From the IMG/VR virus record IMGVR_UViG_3300034073_003542, positions 124,001 to 188,000 of that record: a stretch of 64,000 nt of DNA. One strand, given 5' to 3'. A program made the translations under genes and the position numbers. This document shows, piece by piece, positions 5,580-61,945 of the stretch. The notes below the pieces were generated by a model, which worked only from the letters and a program-made list of their open reading frames with translations, did not search any database and was not told where the DNA came from. Numbering within the stretch: the first letter of the stretch is position 1; each line of letters begins with the position of its first letter.

Positions 5580-6776
5580 ATGGAGAAAAATATGAATATC
5601 AAAACTCGCCGCTCTGCATTTACCCTTGTCGAACTTCTAGTTGTAATTGCTATTATTGGTTTATTAGTAGCAATTTTACTCCCAGCCCTTTCTTCTGCTA
5701 GAAATTCTGCTCAGGCAGCAGCAAGCGGATCAAATTTAAGCACATTTGGTCGTGGTTTCATGATTTTCTCCACAGAAGATAAGCGATCACGCATGAGTAG
5801 CGGCGCTTTTGATCATTTAAGAGATGGAGATGTTAGAAAAGTTGGATGGGTTGCTGATATTATTAGGATTAAGGTGTCAAATCCAGGTAAGGCGCTTGAT
5901 CCAGCTAATACTTATCAGGTAAATGAAAAGGTTGCCGACTATATTGGAGCTACCAATACAACTAAAGCTAATCCTGTTCGCTGGAATAATAAAACAGCAG
6001 ATGTTCATTTTGGTGGAGCTAATGGCCCCACAGATTTTGCTGGATCACCAACACAAGCACAAAAGAATAAATTATGGGAAGACGGATATAACACAAACTA
6101 TGCAACAACATGGCAGTTTAGTCGTGGCGATGTTGTTCCTGGGTCTGACGGAAAGATTAATTCTAATGGAGCTATGAATCCTGTAACATCTGATCCTTCT
6201 AAATGTCCTCTAGATGGTGACGGCCCATTAACAGAAAAGAAATTAACTGGTGGAGGAGTAAGTCGTGATAGAGTTGCTGTAATGGGTGCGGCTCGTCCAG
6301 GCGACGGTTCTGATGCTCTTGTTACTGATGCAATGTTTACCACCTTTAATAATTTCTTTGGAACAGATCAAACAATGATTACAACTGGAGGTATTTTAGT
6401 TGAATCATTTACTGATGGAATGAATTGTCCTTTTACTGATGTTACTCTTGGTGGTGGCACAGATCAAAAAATTCATGAAATTAATGATATTTTCCCTATT
6501 CATGGTTCTCGTAAAACAACTGTTGGAGCAAATACTCTTCTTACAGGAGGATATGCCCAAGTTTTATTTGCGGACGGTCACGTTGCCAAAATTGAGGATG
6601 TGGGCGGTTATCAAGATAATCCTGACAGTTGGCTAGGCCCATATAAAACTGGTGGTGTTCCAACAGCCTCTTCGTTTGAAATTAATAAGAGTGGCTATGA
6701 TGAAGTTAGAGAACTGATCTGGCTCCATCAAATAGGTAACTCGTCAGGTGGTGTTGGCGGAGGTTCTGTAGAGTAA
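5580..6776 (+). CDS. DUF1559-type prepilin N-terminal cleavage/methylation domain protein with H-X-DG C-terminal motif
   Basis: RRSA|FTLVELLVVIAIIGLLVAILLPALSSAR...SNL; C-terminal H...GGYAQVLFADGHV. Likely start at ATG 5592 after GGAG. Confidence 0.9.
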   Translation: MEKNMNIKTRRSAFTLVELLVVIAIIGLLVAILLPALSSARNSAQAAASGSNLSTFGRGFMIFSTEDKRSRMSSGAFDHLRDGDVRKVGWVADIIRIKVSNPGKALDPANTYQVNEKVADYIGATNTTKANPVRWNNKTADVHFGGANGPTDFAGSPTQAQKNKLWEDGYNTNYATTWQFSRGDVVPGSDGKINSNGAMNPVTSDPSKCPLDGDGPLTEKKLTGGGVSRDRVAVMGAARPGDGSDALVTDAMFTTFNNFFGTDQTMITTGGILVESFTDGMNCPFTDVTLGGGTDQKIHEINDIFPIHGSRKTTVGANTLLTGGYAQVLFADGHVAKIEDVGGYQDNPDSWLGPYKTGGVPTASSFEINKSGYDEVRELIWLHQIGNSSGGVGGGSVE

Positions 6777-33074: not shown

Positions 33075-33410
33075 CTATACCTCTCTCCAATACTTTACAA
33101 CCTTTTCGGCCTGCTGAACTTCAACAAAACCCAAATAGTTATCAAAGCGTGTAGTTTCATAGGAAGAATACCAACCATCCAATTTGAAGTATTTGGTTTC
33201 TCCATTCTTTTTTGCTGAAAAAATTACCCAATAATCTGATCCTTCATAAGAAGTAGAACTTGCTTCAATAAAATCAAGGGTAAATCCGTGGATAATTGCG
33301 GATCGCTTATTTCCGTTATCAATAAGTGTCTTAAATCTAAGAAAATCGTTATGATTTTGCTTACCGCTAAGTGCTGCTTTTAGCTCATTGATCATTATAC
33401 ATCCTTCCAA
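33075..33410 (-). CDS. Hypothetical protein, tandem paralog 1
   Basis: EGSDYWVIFS...KYFKLDGWYSSYE. Confidence 0.65.
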   Translation of the reverse strand: MEGCIMINELKAALSGKQNHNDFLRFKTLIDNGNKRSAIIHGFTLDFIEASSTSYEGSDYWVIFSAKKNGETKYFKLDGWYSSYETTRFDNYLGFVEVQQAEKVVKYWREV

Positions 33411-33730
33411 TAGTCAATCATTTTTTGAGCCTTTTCTACTTCATTAAACGCAAAATAATCATCGAAAGTTGAACCTTCATAAGAAGCATACCAACCTTCT
33501 AGCTTAAAGTATCGTGTTTGACCATCCTTAGTGGCTGAAAATACTACCCAATATTCAGATCCCATATCTTCGCCGCCATATCCGTCCTCATGCTTGAGAG
33601 TAAAATCACCGAAAGTCTCTTCGCCGTAACCATCATTGATAAAATCTTGAAAATTATCGTAGTTTTCATCCTTTTCGAGCGTATTTTTCAATTCTTCCAA
33701 CATTATAAGCCTCCTTAAAATCTTTGACAA
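33395..33730 (-). CDS. Hypothetical protein, tandem paralog 2
   Basis: GGEDMGSEYWVVFS...RYFKLEGWYASYEGS. Confidence 0.65.
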   Translation of the reverse strand: MSKILRRLIMLEELKNTLEKDENYDNFQDFINDGYGEETFGDFTLKHEDGYGGEDMGSEYWVVFSATKDGQTRYFKLEGWYASYEGSTFDDYFAFNEVEKAQKMIDYWKDV

Positions 33731-40118: not shown

Positions 40119-40987
40119 TATTTATATTCCTTATAACATTTATTGTTAGCTATTGAATTAATTATTCCATGACTGATATTATAGTCCTTAGCTATATGTC
40201 TATGTGTTTCTTTTCCTTTAGATAGTCTTTTTCTTATTTCTTTAACTTGTGTAAGATTTAATTTTCTTTGACTTAATAAATATTGTTCATATTTTATTCT
40301 TTGTTTTATTATCTTATCAAAATTTTTCTTTTTTCTTTTTAGGAATATTGTTGCGTCCTTATACATAAAATCCATTAGTTTTTTAATTTCTTTGTACCCA
40401 TATAATCTAATATCGCAAGTATAAGTGTTTTGTTTGGTTTTTTTATATTTTACCATAAAAGAAGATATATTTAATTTTCTTTTAAAGAACCTTAATAAAT
40501 ATTCACTAAAGTCACTATTAGAAATAATCATAAAGGTATATTTATTTTGATTTTTACTCTTCGTAACAGATATACCTCCATCACCATCAAAATATCCTCT
40601 TATAAAGTGATGAATTAAATTTTTAGGTATGTGTCTGTATGGAAATTTTAAGGTATAACTTTTTTGATTATCTAATCCCTTATTAATTAAGTGATTAGTA
40701 AAAATTTCTCCGTATATTTTGATATATTTATATTTACTTTGTTTATTTTTGTTGTTTGGAGTATAATGTTTCGAATCTCCTATTTTCCCAGAATATTTTG
40801 TGTACTTTTTAAAGTAACGCAATATCTCTATATCTCTAGCCTGTAATTCAATTTGAACGTACTTATTACTTTTCTTAGTAGAGATATGACCATCTGCACA
40901 TATAAATCCAAATAAATACGCTTTATCTTCTGTATCTATGACTTTAAAATAATCGTGATCTTTATTATGTATATGTTTATTATTCAT
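40118..40987 (-). mobile_element. Free-standing LAGLIDADG homing endonuclease
   Basis: AYLFGFICADG and HFIRGYFDGDG; C-terminal HTH. Confidence 0.88.
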
Positions 40988-42005
40988 TTTCTTTTAGCAG
41001 AAAGTTATTGTTGATGACTTTAAAACTTATATCTGAATCTTTACTTCTAACAACTATCCCCTCTGCTTGTTGTTGTGGAGAAGCGTTTGGAAAGAAGTCT
41101 TTATATTTTATGTCGGATAAAGTAAATAGCTCATTAATTGTATATTTAAAATTATCTCCTTGTTCGATAATTGGAACAAATTTAAGTTCTATTCTCTTTA
41201 TAATATCTAACGCATCGTCAATTGGTAGCTTTTTATTTGTTTCAATATCTACAACGTTGAATATATAGATGTCTGGTTCTGTTACCTTCATCTTATTTCC
41301 TTGTATATTTCCAATTACCTCTCCCTGAATAGCTACTTTAAATCCATCTTGATGTAATTTTCTAAGCTTATTTTCTATGTCATACTTCTCGCTTAGTTTC
41401 CAGAACATATGGTCGGGTTTTTCTTTGTATGAATAATTTCGCCCACAAACATGATAATCTCCCGCTGCATCAATTAAAAATGTGGATGATGTACCATCCA
41501 GCTTTAATGATATATAGTATGGGCGACCCCAAAGAGCCTCGATAAAACGATACTTGTCGTTATTCTGAACTCTTTCTTCGTCTGTCTTAGAAATAGGCCA
41601 ACTAAATCCGCCCTTAACATCTCCTTGAATAGCTGTTGGTACTGGTGGTTCATATTTTTCTATTCCTAGAAACTCTGTAACATCAGCACCTTCAACCGCT
41701 AAACCTATTTCTGGGAATTTATCTATAGGCATAGCAACGCCTTGGGATAAGACTTTTTTTAATTTTATGCTCTTGAGTCTATACTTGTTGATACCATCAC
41801 GCCAGCAGGATTTTTTAAGAAATTCGTAGCGAGGCTCGTCTGGCAATAGGCTGTCTATCTCAAAAAACAAACAGAGGTCGTCTACATTAAATTCATCTTT
41901 CTTGACAACGCATTGCCAATCAAGAATCTTAGCAAGAACAATCTGATCTGCCACCTCAATAGGAAGAATTTCTTTGATTTTTTGTATTGATGCTAGCTGA
42001 CGCAT
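40980..42005 (-). CDS. ATP-dependent RNA ligase (DRB0094/Rnl2-like)
   Basis: RQLASIQKI...ADQI..A.ILDWQCVVKK, KLDGTS, VCGRN, IQGEV, EGIVVR, FKVINNNFLLK. Confidence 0.92.
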   Translation of the reverse strand: MRQLASIQKIKEILPIEVADQIVLAKILDWQCVVKKDEFNVDDLCLFFEIDSLLPDEPRYEFLKKSCWRDGINKYRLKSIKLKKVLSQGVAMPIDKFPEIGLAVEGADVTEFLGIEKYEPPVPTAIQGDVKGGFSWPISKTDEERVQNNDKYRFIEALWGRPYYISLKLDGTSSTFLIDAAGDYHVCGRNYSYKEKPDHMFWKLSEKYDIENKLRKLHQDGFKVAIQGEVIGNIQGNKMKVTEPDIYIFNVVDIETNKKLPIDDALDIIKRIELKFVPIIEQGDNFKYTINELFTLSDIKYKDFFPNASPQQQAEGIVVRSKDSDISFKVINNNFLLKENE

Positions 42006-44230: not shown

Positions 44231-45076
44231 ATGAAAAAAACAAAGAAATGTAAACAGTGTGGAAAAAGAAAATCTATAGACAAATACTATAAACACAAGA
44301 CTTGTAAAGATGGATATAGAGATATTTGTAAGATATGTATTAATAAATTATCTAAAGAATATGTAGAGAAAAATAAAGAAAAAATTGCCCAACGACAAAA
44401 AAAATATAGAGAAAAAAATAAAGAAAAGCTTTCTCAACAAAGAAAAGACTATAGAGAGAAAAATAAAGAAAAGGTCAAAAAACAAAAACAGGCCAACTAT
44501 TTAAAACACAAAAATAAGACATTACAAAAAAGTAAAGAATATAAAGAAAAACTTAAAAAAGAAAATCCAGAAAAATTAAAATTATGGCGAAAAAATTATT
44601 GTATTAGACATAAAAATAAATTAAAAGAATATAAGCGAAACTATCACCAAAAAAACAAAGTAAAAATAAGAAATATAAGGAATAAATATAGAAAATATAA
44701 ATACGATTCAGATATTGGATATAGAATGCAAGAGAATATTAGGAGTAGAATGAGATATCTCTTGAAAGGATATTATAAAAGTAAAGCCACACTAGAATTA
44801 TTAGGATGTTCGGACGATCAACTTAAAAAACATCTAGAAAAACAATTTGAGCCAAGTATGACTTGGGATAATTACGGATATTATGGGTGGCATATTGACC
44901 ATATCAGACCATGTTCTAGTTTTGATTTATCTGATCTAGAACAACAAAAACAGTGCTTTCATTATACGAATTTACAGCCATTATGGGCAAAAGACAATTA
45001 TATTAAAGGTAATAAGATACCTATTTCTTCCAGTGATGATCTTCATGGCCTGCCATTAAACACCCATACGGAATAA
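44231..45076 (+). mobile_element. HNH homing endonuclease (inverted orientation)
   Basis: CKQC...CKIC, Lys-rich helical repeats, WHIDHIRPC...CFHYTNLQPLWAKDN; start placed at MKKTKK. Confidence 0.85.
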
Positions 45077-46409
45077 TTTCATCCACTATATTTCCAAGAT
45101 TAAATTTTTGGATTTGGTTCTTTACTTTTTCAGCATTTTTATAAGCAGATGGAAGTTCTGTTATATCCATTTTTCCTGTGTAGAATCTTACATCTAGACC
45201 CCTAGTATCTTCATCAAACAATTCATATCCTGTTTTGTTTTGTAGAGATATTTTAGTGTATTCAGTTCTACTCATTTCGCGGCCAGCACCATGACTTGTA
45301 AAACCTAAATTAGTTTCGGTTTCTTCTCCATTAACAATAAGAATACCATCTCTCATATTAAGAGGTATTAATCTTAGACCATTAGTTGAGTCAGGAACAA
45401 ATTCATTTAATAATGGTGTTGCTCCTTTGGCATGGATGTAAGTATTATCTTTTTTAAACACAAAATTATGTTCATTCCAATAATTGTCATGTATATTTAC
45501 ATTAATTTTACTAGCAATTTCCGTATGAATAAGCGTATGATTTAGCTTTGTCCATTCTCTAACTACTTGTAAAGCGTTCCAATATGTAACACCTTCTTCT
45601 GTGTCCATTGGAATCCAGCCTAAATTATCATTAACGTTTGGAGCTATTTCTTTACGAAACTTCTCAGCTATGTCATTTCCCTTCTTGAATAATAAAGCTC
45701 CGAAAGAGCGACTGCCATGATGAGTAACTAATACTGTTTCTCCAGAGCTTTTTAAGTAGCCTACAAATAGGAAATGGTTGCCGTTTCCTTGAGTTCTTAA
45801 ATCTTTTTGGGCTTTATCTAGACTTTTTTCTCCAGATAAATATAGATTGTTAAGAATATCGTTCTTTAAAGGTTCTGGTATAATATCTTTTGGATTTTGT
45901 CTTCCACCAGCACCAAAATGTGTTATTTTTTCTGCTTTATCTAGGACAATTTTTGGATCTATTTTTCCTAGATTAGAAAACATAACTGAACAACATACGT
46001 CGGCACTGTGAAATTTTGGGTGGATTGCATTTAAAGTTTGTATGACTCCACCCACAGGAATATCAAACTCGCCCGTAGGGCAAGCGTCAGGCATCACAGC
46101 AGCATTTATAGCGGTTGGAGCCACCAAAATATTGTGCATAGCCCGCGTGACCGAAAACATATTGTTAACTTCGGCCTCATTTTTTGGGTCGATTTCTATA
46201 TTGCAATGAAAATTGATTGGTTCATCCCTTGGTTCCATTGTTTTTGGTGGAAGAGGAACAAAACGTGTCTGAATTTCGTTATACAGATTTTCTTCGCTGT
46301 ACTTGTCTCGATTTTGATTTGCCCACTCAATAGCTGACTTAAACCATTTCCCAGGGGTAAAACCCATACTGATTAAAGATTGACCAGTAATTGACATCAT
46401 ACACCTCAC
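45021..46409 (-). CDS. rtcB: RtcB-family RNA 2',3'-cyclic phosphate ligase
   Basis: VMPDACP, IPVGG, ADVCC, GNGNHF, THHGSR, HN, HAKGATP, SHGAGR.MSR, ELPSAYK. Confidence 0.93.
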   Translation of the reverse strand: MRCMMSITGQSLISMGFTPGKWFKSAIEWANQNRDKYSEENLYNEIQTRFVPLPPKTMEPRDEPINFHCNIEIDPKNEAEVNNMFSVTRAMHNILVAPTAINAAVMPDACPTGEFDIPVGGVIQTLNAIHPKFHSADVCCSVMFSNLGKIDPKIVLDKAEKITHFGAGGRQNPKDIIPEPLKNDILNNLYLSGEKSLDKAQKDLRTQGNGNHFLFVGYLKSSGETVLVTHHGSRSFGALLFKKGNDIAEKFRKEIAPNVNDNLGWIPMDTEEGVTYWNALQVVREWTKLNHTLIHTEIASKINVNIHDNYWNEHNFVFKKDNTYIHAKGATPLLNEFVPDSTNGLRLIPLNMRDGILIVNGEETETNLGFTSHGAGREMSRTEYTKISLQNKTGYELFDEDTRGLDVRFYTGKMDITELPSAYKNAEKVKNQIQKFNLGNIVDEIIPYGCLMAGHEDHHWKK

Positions 46410-56543: not shown

Positions 56544-58248
56544 TTGATCCCAATAAAACTAATGCCTGCTCAACAAAGTCTTTCGTTTCTTGTTCATGCC
56601 ACGAGTATTGTAAATCCCAATCCCTGTCTCTGATAAAAGCATGAAGTTCTTCCTTAGAATCATACCATAATATAGAATTAAAAAGAGATTCTCGTAACTC
56701 TTCAATTTCCTTGAATGATTCACACGCTTGTAAAGCATCACAACCCGAACAACTTCCCCATCCAAAAATCAACATACCATAACGGTTTCCGTCACGCAAA
56801 ATTAAACGAGAATCACCCTGATAATCACTATCATCAACCTGTAAAAGTGTTTCAAAACCCATAGAGTTAATTAAAGCCCCATAATCTCCTGGGCCATAAA
56901 ATCGCCCATATTTCTCTTCATCCTCTGCTAAACAAGGATAAACTTCTCTAATAGGTTGCATCATTCACTCCATTTTTCCTCAATGTAAAACATTGTCTCT
57001 TCTGCTTTCATTGTGTCGTAAAAACAATCAATATCTGTCTCGTATGTAATTTCGTCATACAGTTTTCTATCAACCGTATGTAGAGTATCCATAAGAGCTT
57101 GCCCAAATCTTAGGTCAGGATTATTGCAATACTTTTCGTCAACAAGCTCCATAAAATCAGAAAATTTACTCATTCAATCGCCCTTATTATCCATCCTGCA
57201 CCAGTATTCAAATGAACTAACTGGTGGTGATATATGTGTCGTTCTTTCATGGTCATTTTTTGTCATATACATAATATTAGGCGGAAGTTTACCGGGTGGC
57301 GAAACCCAAGGTTTGTTATCTTCTGGATCAGGAATATACGGCCATGTTTTCTTTTTAGGATATTCTGGGAGAGGAATAGCTGGAGGAATAATCTTGATTG
57401 GTTCACTATTAGCTAATATAAATCTTCCATTACTTTCAATGGTTGCATGAATCTCAACAGATTGTATCGGACTATCAACGAGTTGCTCTAGTTCTGCTAA
57501 ATCTCTAGCTACATAGAATGATGTATGATTTACTTTATATACATATTGAATAGTAACAGATACTTCTTTATTTACTTGTTTTCTAGCCATTGCTTGCCTT
57601 TCTTTCTATTATACGGGAGTTCCTGTGTTTGTCAACTACCTAGTTAAGTTCATGCACTCTTTTTGGGCGGATTTATAATATCTGGGGTTTTCTGTTTTGA
57701 GATATGTTATATATAGATCGAATATTCCTTTTGTTACTTGTTTGTATGTATTTGTCGATCCACAAATCCTGTCAACAAAACTCTTTTTATCAGTATTGAT
57801 TGTATAAAGAGGAAATGGATCGTGTGGTTTCTTGCCATCAAATCTGATATAATATTTAGTGTTAGTTGGATTAACTTCTCTAACATCTCTATTTAATCCT
57901 GCAACCAATTCTTTAGCGAATACTTTATCGTCATCCTTATTTCGTAGAGAATTTTCATATTCATCTTCCAATTCTTGATATTGTAGAGTAGTATAGAATT
58001 TATTTTGTTTTGGTACTTTACTCATTTGCCTTAATTTCTTCTTGAGTGGAAGTGGTTCGATCTTGAGTGATTGGGTGATACAAACTCACCACATATTTCG
58101 TTGAGAACACACCAAAGACCGTTAAAAATAGGGCCACTAATAAAGTTCTTGTGAAACTTTCAGTATAATCAACATCATGTTCGCTGCTCATATTTTCATC
58201 CTATAAGTAAAGGTATTCTGTCTTATTATAACAGAAGTAGAGAGATTG

Positions 58249-59724
58249 TCAACCTTCCTTGATAGTTTTTTCTGTTATTTTCCCCGTTTTTTCTAGTCTC
58301 TCTTGTTCTTCATACTCCATTAATCCAACTACAAGTAAAGATATTTTATCAGCTATTGTTTGTCTTTCTTCTTCCGTCCAACTATCAAAAAAATGATCTA
58401 TACTATCTTCAGCCATTGTAATTCAGTTTCTATGATTTTCTTTGTTATTTTTTCGCCTTTTTCTAATTGAGTTAATTCTGTTTGGTCAACAATTCGTCTC
58501 ATAAATTTAGTCCAATAGTCCATAACATTAGTGGTGTTTTCTTGATTGCTTGGAAATTTGTCGAAATATTCTTCGTTCATTGTATTGTTTTTCTTGTCTG
58601 ATATCCTTCTTGATATCCTTCTGGACTAAAACTGTGAGATATACATTCAGGAACAAATTGCCAATCCCTACTAACGTATTTTACATATAGCCCAGTATTA
58701 TTGTCAATATATCCTCCATCTACAATTACTGTAACTTTATCTGGCGACGATTTTTCTGGTTTCAAAGCCATGTTGATATCCTTCTTCGTAAATATTATGT
58801 GGATCTCTATATTCTATACTTCTAGTTGTTCCATCTAAGTATGTGATATCAATATTGTGTGTCATTCTACCAGCAATATCAGCAATGTTTGGAGCAAATC
58901 CATCCCATATTTGGTCTATTTCTCTTGTACTAGAAATAGTTAGACCTGAAATATTTACAGCTTCTTCTCTTGATATACCAAATGACGCTAATATTGATAT
59001 GGTTGCTTCATCCATTGATTATTCTTGTATAATAAGTCTTGTCTGGTATCCTTTTCGATATCCCATTTTATATCTGTCAAGAAAAACATTTTCAAAACAA
59101 CCAGAACCCATAAAAGCAAAATCGCCCAATAAATATTCAAAATTAACAACTCCAGATGAAAAAGGTAGAGGTTCTTCTATTTGCATCTCTGGTATCCCTG
59201 GTATTGTTACGCTTTCAGGTTGCAATAATTTTTCTTGTTTCATAGCCATGAGTATATCCTGCTTCTAATTTTTGTAGAGAACCAAATAGAAAATCCATTA
59301 ATCGTTTAGTATATGGCTTCTCTTCGTTAGCTTCACAGTAACGATATATTGATTCAATATTGTAAGATTTTTCTTGTTTCATAACCTTCCTCGTAACCTT
59401 CTGGATTACCCAATTCATAATTAATGAATTGAAGACTTCTTCTATCCATAATAATTGGACCCATTGTTTGGTAAGCAAAAAAGGGCATTCTATAACGATC
59501 TTCGTTTTCTGGTATTTCTGGTTTGACTAATCCTCCTGTTGCCATTATTATTCACTCTCGATCTTTTTTAGTGTTTCTTTTCCTGGGATATATCCTTCCC
59601 AATCAGTCATGTCATCCAAAATTATAGTAGCGGCTGATCTTTCAAAAGCCAACTCCAGTTCTCTGAACAAAATAGCTGTAAGGTCTATATGACACGCCCA
59701 AAAATTGTCGATTTCATCAGGCAT
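58249..59724 (-). repeat. Array of 8 overlapping micro-ORFs with a shared C-terminal module
   Basis: ORFs 59548..59724, 59354..59545, 59215..59382, 59019..59249, 58737..59015 and 58577..58771 end in xGYxxG(Y/F/K)(E/Q)T(R/L)xx; 58398..58580 and 58249..58416 carry LEKxxKITxKxI. Confidence 0.8.
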
Positions 59725-59985
59725 CATTTCCGCCCCAAAACTCTTTTAACACTATCTTTAAGTTTATATTATTTTTTCTGTTATATATACGAGCCATTAA
59801 TCTTTTATCAGATGGATCAGACGGCCTCCAAAATTCAACAACATTATCATTAGGAAATCTATAACTATGTGGTGGATCATATTGTCGTATATAAGATATT
59901 TCTCTACTATATCTTTCATAAACATAATATAGTTGCTCTTTAGCTTCATCAAGTAATTGTTTTCTGTTTTCGAAATATTGTTTGA

Positions 59986-60153
59986 TCATATATTATTTAT
60001 AGCAACGATTGTTGAAGCTATTTCTATAATTAGAAAAGATATCAATAAAGCCATTGATCCTAATATAAAACCCGTTGCACTTATAATAATAGTCTGTAAG
60101 GCTATATAACCATATTTTTCTCTTCGTTTTCGTTTAAAGTATTGTCGAATCAT
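59986..60153 (-). CDS. 55-aa membrane micro-protein with MIRQYF N-terminus
   Basis: Manual translation MIRQYFKRKRREKYGYIALQTIIISATGFILGSMALLISFLIIEIASTIVAINNI; overlaps both neighbours at their start/stop codons. Confidence 0.6.
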   Translation of the reverse strand: MIRQYFKRKRREKYGYIALQTIIISATGFILGSMALLISFLIIEIASTIVAINNI

Positions 60154-61391
60154 TATACGGTAGCACCAATTATTTCTATCAAAGTAGTTTGTTTTGATTC
60201 TATTTCAGATAGGTCTTTCTCTATAAGATCAAGAATGTTTGATTTGAAATAGACTTCTTGTAGATGAGCATAAAGAGTTCCGTGATATTCTGACTCAAAA
60301 CCTGACTCACACATAAGAGGAGAGGTTGAATATGGATCTTTTTCCCATACATAAAGATATCCTCTTCTGTCATATTCGCCCAATCTAAGAAGATTTGAAT
60401 ATTTTCCCAGTTCTTTATATCCATATTTTATTACTGCTACATATAAATCTTCTATAAAGGTTAGTTTTTCTATTATATTATTGAGAATCTTAAAACCAAA
60501 ATGTCTTTTAATAGCTCCGTATTCTGGTAATTTTAACTCACTAATAGTAGTATAGATTTGATTTATTCTATTTCTTATTGAATCAATCTGTGAAGATTTA
60601 GTTTCTAGTTGTAACATATAGCTGGACTTCTTGTTTGATTTGTTTTAGGTCTTGATTCAAAAGATCAATAAGATTATCTTTAAAAGAGCATATAATATCT
60701 CCATTTGGATCTATTCTTAGAACCTCAAGATATTTTTTGTATTCATGATATACACTCTCATGTACAGGAAATGTATTAAGCATAGAATAATTTATACTAT
60801 TATTAATCATATCTAACTTTCTTTCAAAGAAGTATCTCTTAATAAGACTCATATCTTTGATTAGATATTTAAGTTCGGTGATCTTATCGTATATTGCTAT
60901 CATATCATTTTATCTAGTTCTTTCTCGATAAGGTCTAATACATTTGGCTTAAAGTACATATCTGGAAGTAACGATTGACCAAATTGATTGCAATAATGTC
61001 CTATGTCAATATATTTATCTGATATAATCATATTAAATGTTTCGTATGTATCGTAATTATATATTACGAAACTAAGTTCTGTAGTTACGCCACATTCTTC
61101 ATAAGAACAATATTGAGATATAGTAGTACAATATCTATTAAGATTTTCTTCTCCATACATATCAAAAAGAGTTAATACGGATTTAAACTCATTTAGTTTA
61201 TCAAATACACTTCTTCTTTTTATTGTCTCGAAATGTTTTTTAATCATTCCAAGCTTAGAATAATCACCACCAACAAGAGAATTTCTAGTTTGATGAATTT
61301 TATGGAGAAGCTCTTTGATAGTCATACATTTTCTTTCTCTTGATTCTGTTAGATATAATCTGTTTGGTTTGATCTTTATTGATAACCCCAA
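60153..61391 (-). other. Three tandem paralogous hypothetical genes (60153..60617, 60598..60903, 60900..61391)
   Basis: Shared IK(R/K)(H/Y)F and C-terminal FKxN(I/L/V)(L/I)DL(I/L)xx(D/E)L motifs. Confidence 0.7.
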
Positions 61392-61945
61392 TATAATTCA
61401 AACCCAATAAATAAGACAAATCTTCTGGATCAATACCGCACTGATCTACTTTGACTCGCTCTTTTTTGCAGATTCCTAGAAAATCATTTAGAAAAAATCC
61501 CGAGACAAATTGATTAAAAGTTTTCATCAGACACCTTCTTTTTTCCCTGAAACTAAAGTTAGCGGGCCTTTAGAAATCCATACAAAGTCATCAAAACTAT
61601 AAGGAAAGATTTCATTATGTCTGTATATTTGTACGTGTTTTCCTGGTTCTCCAGGCATCATATCTCTAACCAGAATTATCTCTGATCCAGCACACGAATG
61701 TCTTTTTGCCCAATAATATCCAGGCTTTCTAGTTTTAGTCATTATTATTGCCTTCCACAATAATTAAGTTTCTATCGCTCCCAAAATCGTAATCGTCATT
61801 ATCGGCCAGAATCTCTATCTGTTTGATTCTCCAATCCAACTCATTCGTATAGTAATCAGCTATAGCATTTAGACTTGGGCCGACTACCCAATCAGTTGTT
61901 TCTTGTTTAGTTGCGGTTGCGTGAGTAATTTTACAAAGTATCATA

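What the first reader, a model, noticed from the sequence alone, without database searches (positions are those of the whole stretch)
58249..59724. Cassette-like array of micro-ORFs with variable bodies and a shared dual-coding C-terminal module
Seen: six consecutive 55-92 aa ORFs with unrelated N-terminal bodies end in EGYIPGKETLKKI, EGYEEGYETRKI, AGYTHGYETRKI, MGYRKGYQTRLI, EGYQHGFETRKI and EGYQEGYQTRKT. Two further ORFs end with LEKGEKITKKII and LEKTGKITEKTI. Unit spacing is irregular (about 140-280 nt). Third-position variation (GGA/GGT/GGC, TAT/TAC, ACA/ACC) suggests protein-level selection. In three junctions the same DNA also supplies the next ORF's start in another frame (GGTTATGAAACAAG gives MKQEK; CATGGCTATG gives MAMKQEK; CATGGCTTTG gives MALKPEK) with GAAGGA upstream as a Shine-Dalgarno-like site. 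Established: GxxxG repeats mediate helix packing, as in FliH-type GYxxG repeats. Inference: a modular diversification system in which the constant module is both a recombination/translation-coupling joint and a docking tag that brings variable peptides (e.g. anti-defence effectors) to one partner. Candidate undescribed system.
Basis: partly seen in the sequence, partly recalled or inferred. Interest (0 to 1): 0.8.

Follow-up and report, generated by a model that had tools for sequence, protein, structure and literature searches.

The report
Phage small genes sharing one tail
In an uncultured T4-like phage, five neighbouring tiny genes with unrelated bodies all end in the same roughly 15-residue peptide, and the DNA encoding that peptide is where co-existing strains gain or lose whole genes, which makes it a protein-coding version of the "linker" sequences known to shuffle phage genes.

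Summary
On the minus strand, ORFs B–F (58577–59545) end in xGYxxG[YF][EQ]TR[KL] three to four residues before the stop. The motif occurs nowhere else in the window. The strict DNA pattern occurs in no other IMG/VR contig. The five bodies show no detectable protein, DNA or cross-frame similarity.

The tail is selected as a peptide: 12 of 13 third codon positions vary, against 6 and 5 at positions 1 and 2. The synonymous:nonsynonymous count is 29:12 in the tail frame and 4:42 and 7:43 in the other two frames. Three tails also carry an SD-like site and the ATG plus first codons of the next ORF.

Array content is polymorphic. About 26–29% of the population in two runs lacks cassette D, through an exact in-frame tail-to-tail hybrid. 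One relative has an extra 54-aa ORF between E and F. Another bubble replaces G.

Best reading: a coding, partly dual-coding linker that mediates cassette shuffling in an early hyperplastic region. This works like T4-type PeSLs, but the linker is also a conserved C-terminal tag, as the capsid-targeting sequence is for T4 internal proteins.

The docking and anti-defence roles are untested, and the FliH link is unsupported. ORF A is a borderline member. G and H are ordinary tandem paralogs.

The parts
59354..59545 (-). ORF B, 63 aa, ends NPEGYEEGYETRKILQY*. Its tail contains the start of C.
   Evidence: The first 34 codons are identical in L004.
59215..59382 (-). ORF C, 55 aa (MKQEK...), ends AGYTHGYETRKIIAT*. 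Its tail contains the SD-like site and start of D.
   Evidence: AF2 predicts two helices with the tail continuing helix 2, pLDDT 69.
59019..59249 (-). ORF D, 76 aa (MAMKQEK...), ends MGYRKGYQTRLIIQE*. This cassette is absent from about 26-29% of the population in runs X1 and X2.
58737..59015 (-). ORF E, 92 aa, ends EEGYQHGFETRKIVAR*. Its tail contains the SD-like site and start of F.
   Evidence: Ortholog P0005 is 64% identical, with a different tail half.
58577..58771 (-). ORF F, 64 aa (MALKPEK...), ends SPEGYQEGYQTRKTIQ*.
   Evidence: Ortholog P0009 has a mosaic body. AF2 model is low confidence: beta hairpin plus coil.
59548..59727 (-). ORF A, 59 aa, ends EGYIPGKETLKKIESE*. Borderline or degenerate tail member.
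   Evidence: Ortholog in L004 with crude pN/pS of about 0.4.
58398..58580 (-). ORF G, 60 aa, with LEKGEKITKKII ten residues before its end. Tandem paralog of H. Replaced by another sequence in about 20% of run X2.
58249..58416 (-). ORF H, 55 aa, ends LEKTGKITEKTIKEG*. Paralog of G and last gene of the unit.
59354..59401 (-). Tail module of B (E-type, with an internal ATG at 59380-59382 that starts C).
59215..59262 (-). Tail module of C (AGGA, then 7 nt, then the ATG at 59247-59249 that starts D). It is the left breakpoint (59225) of the D-less haplotype.
59019..59066 (-). Tail module of D (Q-type, no internal start). It is the right breakpoint (59029) of the D-less haplotype.
58737..58784 (-). 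Tail module of E (AAGGA, then 7 nt, then the ATG at 58769-58771 that starts F).
58577..58621 (-). Tail module of F (Q-type, no internal start). The G start overlaps F's stop (ATGA).
58225..58252 (-). Perfect sigma-70 consensus promoter (TTGACA, 16 nt, TATAAT, with TG) at the 3' end of the array. It marks the end of the polycistronic unit.
59746..59748 (-). Site where relative L004 carries a 218-nt insertion (an 82-aa gene). The site lies inside the 3' end of the 90-aa gene, about 25 nt before A's start. The inserted gene inherits the C-terminal ...FGGENDA*.

Best explanation
This is a hyperplastic early-gene cluster of an uncultured T4-like or huge phage (IMG/VR UViG_3300034073_003542). In it, five ORFan genes with unrelated bodies are joined by a conserved, translated linker of about 42-48 nt.

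The linker consists of two 12-nt GAAGGWTAYSAR units, then ACAAGAAAAAT, then 3-4 codons and a stop. It does three things.

1. It encodes the C-terminal peptide EGYxxG[YF][EQ]TRKI..., which is itself under purifying selection. This is shown.

2. In its 'E-type' form it also carries an SD-like AGGA/AAGGA site, plus the ATG and first 5-7 codons (MA[ML]K[QP]EK) of the next ORF in the +1 frame. The sequence shows this; translation is inferred. In the 'Q-type' form, GAA is changed to CAG. That removes the ATG, and the next gene starts after the stop.

3. It is where cassettes are added, lost or exchanged between co-existing strains, always in frame, so every recombinant keeps an intact tail and an intact downstream start. 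The breakpoints are shown. That the phage's own homologous recombination uses the roughly 40-nt patches is inferred.

The peptide most likely acts as a common interaction or oligomerisation tag for otherwise unrelated early proteins. This last step is inference only.
For: Motif specificity and position.

Unrelated bodies: blastp, Smith-Waterman against shuffles with minimum p about 0.03 in 28 pairs, and no DNA or cross-frame similarity. C is predicted helical and F a beta hairpin plus coil.

Peptide-level selection: variable sites by codon position are 6/5/12. Amino-acid identity is 0.65 in the tail frame and 0.38 and 0.41 in the other two. No column shuffle out of 20,000 reached the observed value. 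Synonymous:nonsynonymous counts are 29:12 in the tail frame, against 4:42 and 7:43.

Starts and SD.

Cassette polymorphism with breakpoints inside tails:
- The joint 59029 to 59225 has depth 4 against 11.5 in X1 and 30 against 73.3 in X2. Reconstructed, it gives C ending ...GYETRKIIVQE* followed directly by E's start.
- The ENA relative has the order D'?-E'-X(54 aa)-F'. X overlaps F' by 32 nt, and E' has a different second tail half, GYQTCKKLI.
- A bubble replaces G in X2.
- L004 is mosaic, with 27%, 0%, a tail patch, then 0% divergence.
- In L004 an inserted gene inherits the resident C-terminus.

Setting: 14 perfect sigma-70 promoters against 0.12 expected, no terminators or promoters between cassettes, and an rIIA-like gene.

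Precedent: T4-type phages recombine on homology patches of less than 50 bp, and conserved linkers shuffle ORFans (PMC2839356).
Against: Only one phage lineage carries the module, so everything rests on 5 copies and 3-4 haplotypes.

The copies are only 70-85% identical. That is poor substrate for homologous recombination.

The D-less junction is one codon off the in-register product, and its flanks carry 1-2 other changes. It is therefore an old allele, not a fresh crossover, and insertion cannot be told from deletion.

The read evidence is from assembled Logan contigs, not raw reads.

The sequence of ORF X was never seen. Its tail is back-calculated from coordinates and from the N-terminus of F'.

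There is no expression data and no partner or function for the peptide.

Neighbouring genes (G/H, and the 101/154/163-aa family) are ordinary diverged paralogs. Extreme divergence of a single ancestral gene therefore cannot be excluded.
Confidence: 0.58

Rival explanations
1. This is an ordinary tandem-duplicated family of tiny early proteins. The C-terminal motif is the only constrained part, and the bodies have diverged beyond recognition. Recombination between the repeated 3' ends is an incidental consequence of repeats in a recombination-proficient phage.
For: Adjacent G/H are such paralogs. The 101/154/163-aa genes just upstream share N- and C-terminal motifs around a variable middle. F and F' already differ almost completely over residues 8-35 while their C-terminal halves are identical, so bodies change fast. 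C, D and F share both an N-terminal motif and the tail.
Against: Body lengths range from 40 to 77 aa. There is no similarity by Smith-Waterman against shuffles, blastn or tblastx. Predicted secondary structures differ. The shared N-terminal motif is simply the previous gene's tail read in the +1 frame. The second half of each tail travels with the downstream gene and not with the body: E and X both end HGFETRKI in front of F and F'.
Confidence: 0.25
2. The tail is a passive by-product of where new genes insert. Insertions land just upstream of the next gene's translation-initiation region, inside the 3' end of the preceding ORF. Each newcomer then inherits the same last codons, and the peptide has no function of its own.
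For: This happened next door. In L004 an 82-aa gene is inserted about 25 nt before A's start, and it ends ...KKFGGENDA* like the displaced 90-aa gene's ...KEFWGGNDA*. The tails contain the SD-like site and start of the next ORF in three joints.
Against: Substitutions are overwhelmingly synonymous in the tail frame and nonsynonymous in the downstream gene's frame. Q-type tails (D, F) carry no start yet keep the peptide. The tail's position is fixed relative to its own stop, not relative to the next start.
Confidence: 0.12
3. The motif is a nucleic-acid signal on the mRNA or DNA, such as a translational operator, an RNase site or a site for a dedicated recombinase. The ORF endings are coincidental.
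For: The module is a direct DNA repeat with two SD-like GAAGGA units.
Against: There is no shared RNA fold (z-scores from -1.9 to +1.0). No inverted repeat was found, and no recombinase was identified nearby. Third-position wobble destroys nucleotide identity while keeping the peptide.
Confidence: 0.05

Closest known systems
PeSL cassettes (promoter-early stem-loop linkers) of T4-type phages (Arbiol et al. 2010, PMC2839356; Comeau et al. 2014, PMC4122927)
   Same: Both are short conserved repeats flanking ORFans in early, hyperplastic regions rich in sigma-70 consensus promoters. Insertion, deletion or replacement of single ORFans between close relatives has its breakpoints inside the repeats. 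The proposed mechanism in both is phage homologous recombination on patches of less than 50-100 bp.
   Different: PeSLs are intergenic and consist of a promoter plus a terminator stem-loop. Here there is no intergenic space, no promoter and no stem-loop at the joints. This linker is coding, is selected as a peptide, and is partly read in two frames. Mini-circles were not tested.
T4 internal proteins sharing the capsid targeting sequence (reviewed in PMC3012670, which cites Repoila et al. 1994)
   Same: Both are sets of small, highly diverse proteins, some of them anti-restriction in T4. What they have in common is a short conserved peptide tag, and they are encoded in a polymorphic locus of T-even phages.
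   Different: The CTS is N-terminal and is cleaved by the prohead protease, and the genes are late-expressed virion components. Here the tag is C-terminal, the genes lie in an early-promoter region, and no link to the capsid is known.
Glycine-rich motifs of gp38 adhesins in T-even phages (PMC3157838)
   Same: Both are short conserved coding motifs that separate variable segments and allow them to be interchanged while the reading frame and structure are kept.
   Different: GRMs lie inside one protein and form its structural core. Here each conserved motif terminates a separate ORF.
Integron gene cassettes (attC-bounded, promoterless ORFs). This comparison rests on my own knowledge and was not tested against a library.
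   Same: Both are arrays of unrelated small ORFs, each followed by a repeat at its 3' end. Cassettes depend on the platform for expression. Here D takes its SD-like site, ATG and first 7 codons from the resident joint.
   Different: No integrase was identified near the array, and there is no attC-like imperfect palindrome. The repeats here are translated.
FliH/YscL GxxxG repeat segments
   Same: Both show a G-aromatic-x-x-G-aromatic periodicity of four, compatible with one face of a helix. C's tail is modelled as helical.
   Different: There are only two units. There is no FliH or any other Pfam or PDB match. The context is unrelated.

Membership tests
PeSL regulatory cassettes | Located in intergenic space between ORFans | tested here: not met
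   The modules lie inside ORFs. Neighbouring genes overlap or abut, from a 3-nt gap to a 35-nt overlap.
PeSL regulatory cassettes | Contains a strong sigma-70-like early promoter | tested here: not met
   None of the 14 perfect promoters lies in a tail. The nearest is at 58252-58225, after H.
PeSL regulatory cassettes | Contains a terminator stem-loop | tested here: not met
   There are 0 terminator-like sites in 57000-61500. The tails share no fold.
PeSL regulatory cassettes | ORFan gain, loss or replacement between close relatives with breakpoints in the repeats | tested here: met
   The D-less hybrid tail. The extra ORF X between E' and F'.
T4 internal-protein / CTS system | Shared N-terminal targeting peptide removed by the prohead protease | tested here: not met
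   The shared peptide is C-terminal. The N-termini differ except where they are encoded by the joint.
T4 internal-protein / CTS system | Proteins are packaged in the virion | not testable with these tools
   This needs virion proteomics of an uncultured phage.
T4 internal-protein / CTS system | Unrelated bodies behind one short tag, in a polymorphic locus | tested here: met
FliH-type GxxxG repeat proteins | Match to the FliH family, or long runs of [AG]xxxG repeats | tested here: not met
   No Pfam hit at E up to 10. No PDB hit. There are only two GYxx units.
Integron cassette array | attC-type imperfect inverted repeat at each cassette end | tested here: not met
   No inverted repeats lie within the modules, and there is no stable fold.
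Integron cassette array | Adjacent tyrosine-recombinase integrase | not tested
   Only ten large window proteins were scanned against Pfam, and none was an integrase. The rest of the 210-kb contig was not examined.
Tandem paralog family (ordinary duplication) | Collinear similarity over the whole protein | tested here: not met
   For B-F, there is none beyond the tail and the joint-encoded N-terminus. For G/H it is met.

The most novel reading that the evidence does not exclude
This would be a recombinase-independent, integron-like platform in a phage. 'Startless' ORFan cassettes plug into a dual-coding joint. The joint gives each newcomer its ribosome-binding site, start codon and first residues on one side. 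On the other side it gives a selected C-terminal docking or oligomerisation tag. Unrelated early effectors, for example counter-defence proteins, can then be swapped between strains while always being expressed and always being delivered to the same partner.
Probability: 0.2. Interest if true: 0.8.

Novelty: new variant of a known kind. Interest (0 to 1): 0.55.

Why it matters
Linker-mediated modular shuffling is the classical explanation for phage mosaicism, but the documented linkers are non-coding (PeSLs) or lie inside a single protein (the gp38 motifs).

Here one 45-nt element appears to be three things at once: a recombination joint between separate genes, the translation start of the next gene, and a peptide kept by selection.

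If that holds, it shows how a phage can exchange whole ORFans with very little risk of producing dead junctions. It would also give a handle, the common tail, for finding what a set of otherwise uninterpretable ORFans act on.

The practical limits are that the element is known from one uncultured subsurface phage lineage only, and that its host is unknown.

Tried and rejected
1. Chance or artefact. Rejected by motif counts and by the collection scans.

2. Decayed long gene or frameshifted pseudogene. Rejected because every unit ends with the tail at a fixed distance from its own stop, and because the orthologs A', E' and F' keep the ORFs.

3. Hidden relatedness of the bodies at DNA level or in other frames. 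None found.

4. RNA structure or operator. No shared fold.

5. Family assignment. PHROGs, Pfam, PADLOC, PDB, the ESM Atlas and GenBank phages gave nothing usable.

6. Exhaustive search with E. It found only its ortholog, plus weak matches to beta-sandwich repeats in two long proteins. I do not interpret these.

7. Getting DNA for the ENA relative. It failed because the sample file is too large.

8. Listing tail-only matches in the 5.8-billion-protein database.

9. Alignment-driven locus search.

10. Searches with flanking genes. They returned only the window's own contig.

11. G and H. They have no relatives outside this phage.

12. RNA runs. None was listed.

13. Long gene overlaps are not rare in my crude gene set for this window: 13 overlaps of more than 20 nt. 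I therefore did not use overlap length alone as evidence.

Full report
**Setting**

The window is positions 124001-188000 of IMG/VR contig UViG_3300034073_003542, which is 209,847 bp long. It has 34% G+C, and almost all its genes are on the minus strand.

It encodes an rIIA-like protein that is 32-38% identical to those of T4-like phages and of a 595-kb uncultured phage. It also encodes RtcB, an RNA ligase, an ATP-dependent DNA ligase and UvdE. There are 14 perfect TTGACA-N16-18-TATAAT promoters where 0.12 are expected, and 13 of them are on the gene strand. This is an early, hyperplastic-type region of a distant T4-like or huge phage.

No GenBank phage is close at the DNA level. The DNA comes from subsurface or soil metagenomes of a single study.

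**The observation**

On the minus strand lie eight tightly packed ORFs:
- A 59548-59727
- B 59354-59545
- C 59215-59382
- D 59019-59249
- E 58737-59015
- F 58577-58771
- G 58398-58580
- H 58249-58416

B-F end in xGYxxG[YF][EQ]TR[KL], followed by three or four residues and a stop. The strict motif occurs five times in all six frames of the 64 kb, only here, and always 4-5 residues from a stop.

Among 178 minus-strand ORFs, the ten B-F tail pairs score 43-69 and the background is about 36 or less. The only other outlier is a pair of genuine full-length paralogs at 33.1-33.7 kb.

At the DNA level the tails form a direct-repeat family of 32-67 nt at 70-85% identity. A DNA profile finds exactly five copies.

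The back-translated pattern is absent from every other IMG/VR contig. Its 11 hits in the metagenome collection are chance: non-coding frames, or internal to unrelated proteins.

A's tail (EGYIPGKETLKKIESE) is only borderline.

G and H carry LEK..KIT.K.I, but they align collinearly over their whole length (29% identity, E = 0.001). They are therefore an ordinary tandem paralog pair.

**Are the bodies related?**

With the tails and the joint-encoded N-termini removed, no pair of bodies exceeds shuffled controls. The minimum is p about 0.03 in 28 comparisons (blastp). There is no DNA or cross-frame similarity beyond 7-10-nt words.

AlphaFold2 models C as two helices, with the tail continuing the second helix (pLDDT 69). 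It models F as a beta hairpin plus coil (pLDDT 49). This is weak evidence, but it points to different folds.

No family library, defence library, PDB profile or Atlas search explains any of the eight ORFs.

**Is the tail a peptide or only DNA?**

Over 13 aligned codons of B-F, the variable sites by codon position are 6, 5 and 12. Mean pairwise amino-acid identity is 0.65 in the tail frame and 0.38 and 0.41 in the other frames. None of 20,000 column shuffles reaches 0.65. Single-nucleotide codon differences are 29 synonymous to 12 nonsynonymous in the tail frame, against 4:42 and 7:43 in the other two. The pairs are not phylogenetically independent, but the direction is unambiguous: the tail is translated and is selected as a peptide.

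The tails share no RNA fold.

**Dual coding**

In three joints the next ORF starts inside the tail in the +1 frame: C inside B (29-nt overlap), D inside C (35 nt) and F inside E (35 nt). This gives the shared N-termini M(A[ML])K[QP]EK.

The phage's SD signal is G/A-rich at -12 to -8. The AGGA/AAGGA of the first 'EG' codons lies 7 nt before the D and F start codons.

In the D and F tails, the Glu codon GAA is CAG (Gln). That removes the internal ATG, and the next genes (E and G) start after or on the stop. The peptide is therefore conserved with or without the second reading frame. It is also the more constrained of the two frames: for example, ACA to ACC is silent in the tail but changes Gln to Pro in the downstream N-terminus.

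**Variation among relatives**

1. Contigs of two runs contain a minority path that joins 59029 to 59225 with two letters between. Its depth is 4 against 11.5 in X1 and 30 against 73.3 in X2, which is about 26-29%. Reconstructed, C ends ...AGYTHGYETRKIIVQE* and is followed directly by E's start. This is an exact in-frame hybrid of the C and D tails, with cassette D absent. It is one codon longer than the in-register crossover product, and its flanks carry 1-2 other changes. It is therefore an established allele, and insertion cannot be told from deletion.

2. An ENA contig encodes a 48-aa fragment, then E' (64% identical to E, tail EEGYQKGYQTCKKLI), then an extra 54-aa ORF X, then F'. X overlaps F' by 32 nt. 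From F's N-terminus MALKPEKLLTDN and the gene coordinates, X must end ...HGFETRKIIN*. This is inference, because no DNA was available. So the second half of the tail travels with the downstream gene, and the first half travels with the body. X matched none of the six profiles, so its body is new.

3. In X2 a 21x path replaces 58444 to about 58600 (G) with other sequence that includes a stretch like the E-tail/F-start.

4. L004 (JGI, 1,145 bp) compared with the window is mosaic: 21 differences in 79 nt at A's 5' end, none in the next 72 nt, five inside A's tail, and none in the following 127 nt into B. The same alleles are present at about 24% in X2.

5. L004 also lacks the window's 154-aa and 55-aa genes. 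It has a 218-nt insertion (an 82-aa gene) about 25 nt before A's start, inside the 90-aa gene. The inserted gene inherits the C-terminus ...KKFGGENDA*.

Array content is therefore not invariant. The events that could be resolved break inside the junction modules and preserve the frames.

Orthologous comparison gives a crude pN/pS of about 0.4 for A and 0.23 for the 90-aa gene, so these are real genes.

**Mechanism**

I commit to a coding linker. The recombination system of a T4-type phage works on homology patches of less than 50 bp, according to the discussion in PMC2839356. It would exchange or excise cassettes at the 42-48-nt modules.

Because the module is at once the end of one ORF and, in its E-type form, the ribosome-binding site and start of the next, any in-register exchange yields two intact genes.

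Shown: the repeat family, peptide-level selection, the overlapping starts in the sequence, and cassette polymorphism with in-tail breakpoints.

Inferred: that homology causes the exchanges, that the overlapping starts are used, and that the peptide is a common interaction or oligomerisation tag.

Against this reading: the copies are only 70-85% identical, the sample of haplotypes is small and contig-based, there is no expression evidence, and true paralog families lie next door.

**Comparison with known systems**

Functionally the array behaves like PeSL-mediated modular shuffling (PMC2839356, PMC4122927), but it fails three of the four PeSL criteria. It is not intergenic, it has no promoter, and it has no stem-loop.

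The 'one short tag on unrelated bodies in a polymorphic locus' logic matches the T4 internal proteins and their capsid targeting sequence (PMC3012670). That tag, however, is N-terminal and linked to the virion.

Conserved coding motifs that separate exchangeable segments are known in gp38 adhesins (PMC3157838).

The FliH analogy finds no support.

I found no description of a translated, dual-frame inter-gene linker in the searchable literature. That is weak negative evidence.

**Verdict**

This is a real and unusual feature. I file it as a new variant of linker-mediated modular shuffling, with the peptide's function unresolved. Interest is moderate to high. It is limited by being confined to one uncultured lineage and by the lack of expression or partner data.

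Noticed in passing
window 2638-58252 (14 sites, e.g. 57608-57635 and 58225-58252): There are 14 perfect TTGACA-N16-18-TATAAT promoters where 0.12 are expected, and 13 of them are on the gene strand. This is a T4-style early-promoter landscape across the whole window.
   Followed up: partly
window 60153-61391 (ORFs 60153-60617, 60598-60903, 60900-61391): Three adjacent genes (154, 101 and 163 aa) look like diverged paralogs. They share an N-terminal IK[RK][HY]F motif and a C-terminal FKxNxxDL[IL]xxxL motif around a variable middle. L004 lacks the 154-aa member.
   Followed up: partly
window 59746-59748 versus L004:621-838: A relative carries an extra 82-aa gene inserted inside the 3' end of the 90-aa gene. 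The newcomer takes over that gene's last residues (FGGENDA) and A's upstream region. So 'tail inheritance' at junctions also occurs outside the GY array.
   Followed up: yes
window 59546-59581 (A tail end and B start): A 573-nt contig in runs X1 and X2 (depth about 7 in X1) matches only these 36 nt, with 6 mismatches, and is otherwise unlike the window. The A-tail/B-start junction therefore exists in another, unseen context.
   Followed up: no
window 59665-59743: The 5' third of gene A and its upstream junction differ by 27% between the window and L004, while the flanking DNA is 0-2% different. This is a sharp mosaic patch, and both alleles co-exist in run X2.
   Followed up: partly
window 33075-33730: Two adjacent ORFs of about 111 aa each have clearly similar C-termini (score 55) and appear to be ordinary tandem paralogs.
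   Followed up: no
window 40980-42005 and 45021-46409: An RNA ligase (OB-fold plus RNA_ligase domains) and an RtcB-type ligase lie within 5 kb of each other. This suggests a tRNA or RNA repair module, perhaps a counter to host anticodon nucleases.
   Followed up: no
window 5580-6776 (+ strand): One of the few plus-strand genes encodes a 398-aa protein with a prokaryotic N-terminal methylation (pilin/pseudopilin) motif. That is unusual for a phage early region.
   Followed up: no
window 58737-59015 (ORF E, residues 22-59): The body of E weakly resembles a repeated beta-sandwich-like unit in two long, probably secreted proteins (E = 1.5e-5 and 1.5e-4, inflated by the repeats). The significance is unclear.
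   Followed up: partly
window 58018-58191: The first gene after the array's terminal promoter encodes a 57-aa protein with one hydrophobic, probably membrane-spanning, segment. A 55-aa hydrophobic ORF also sits at 59986-60153.
   Followed up: no
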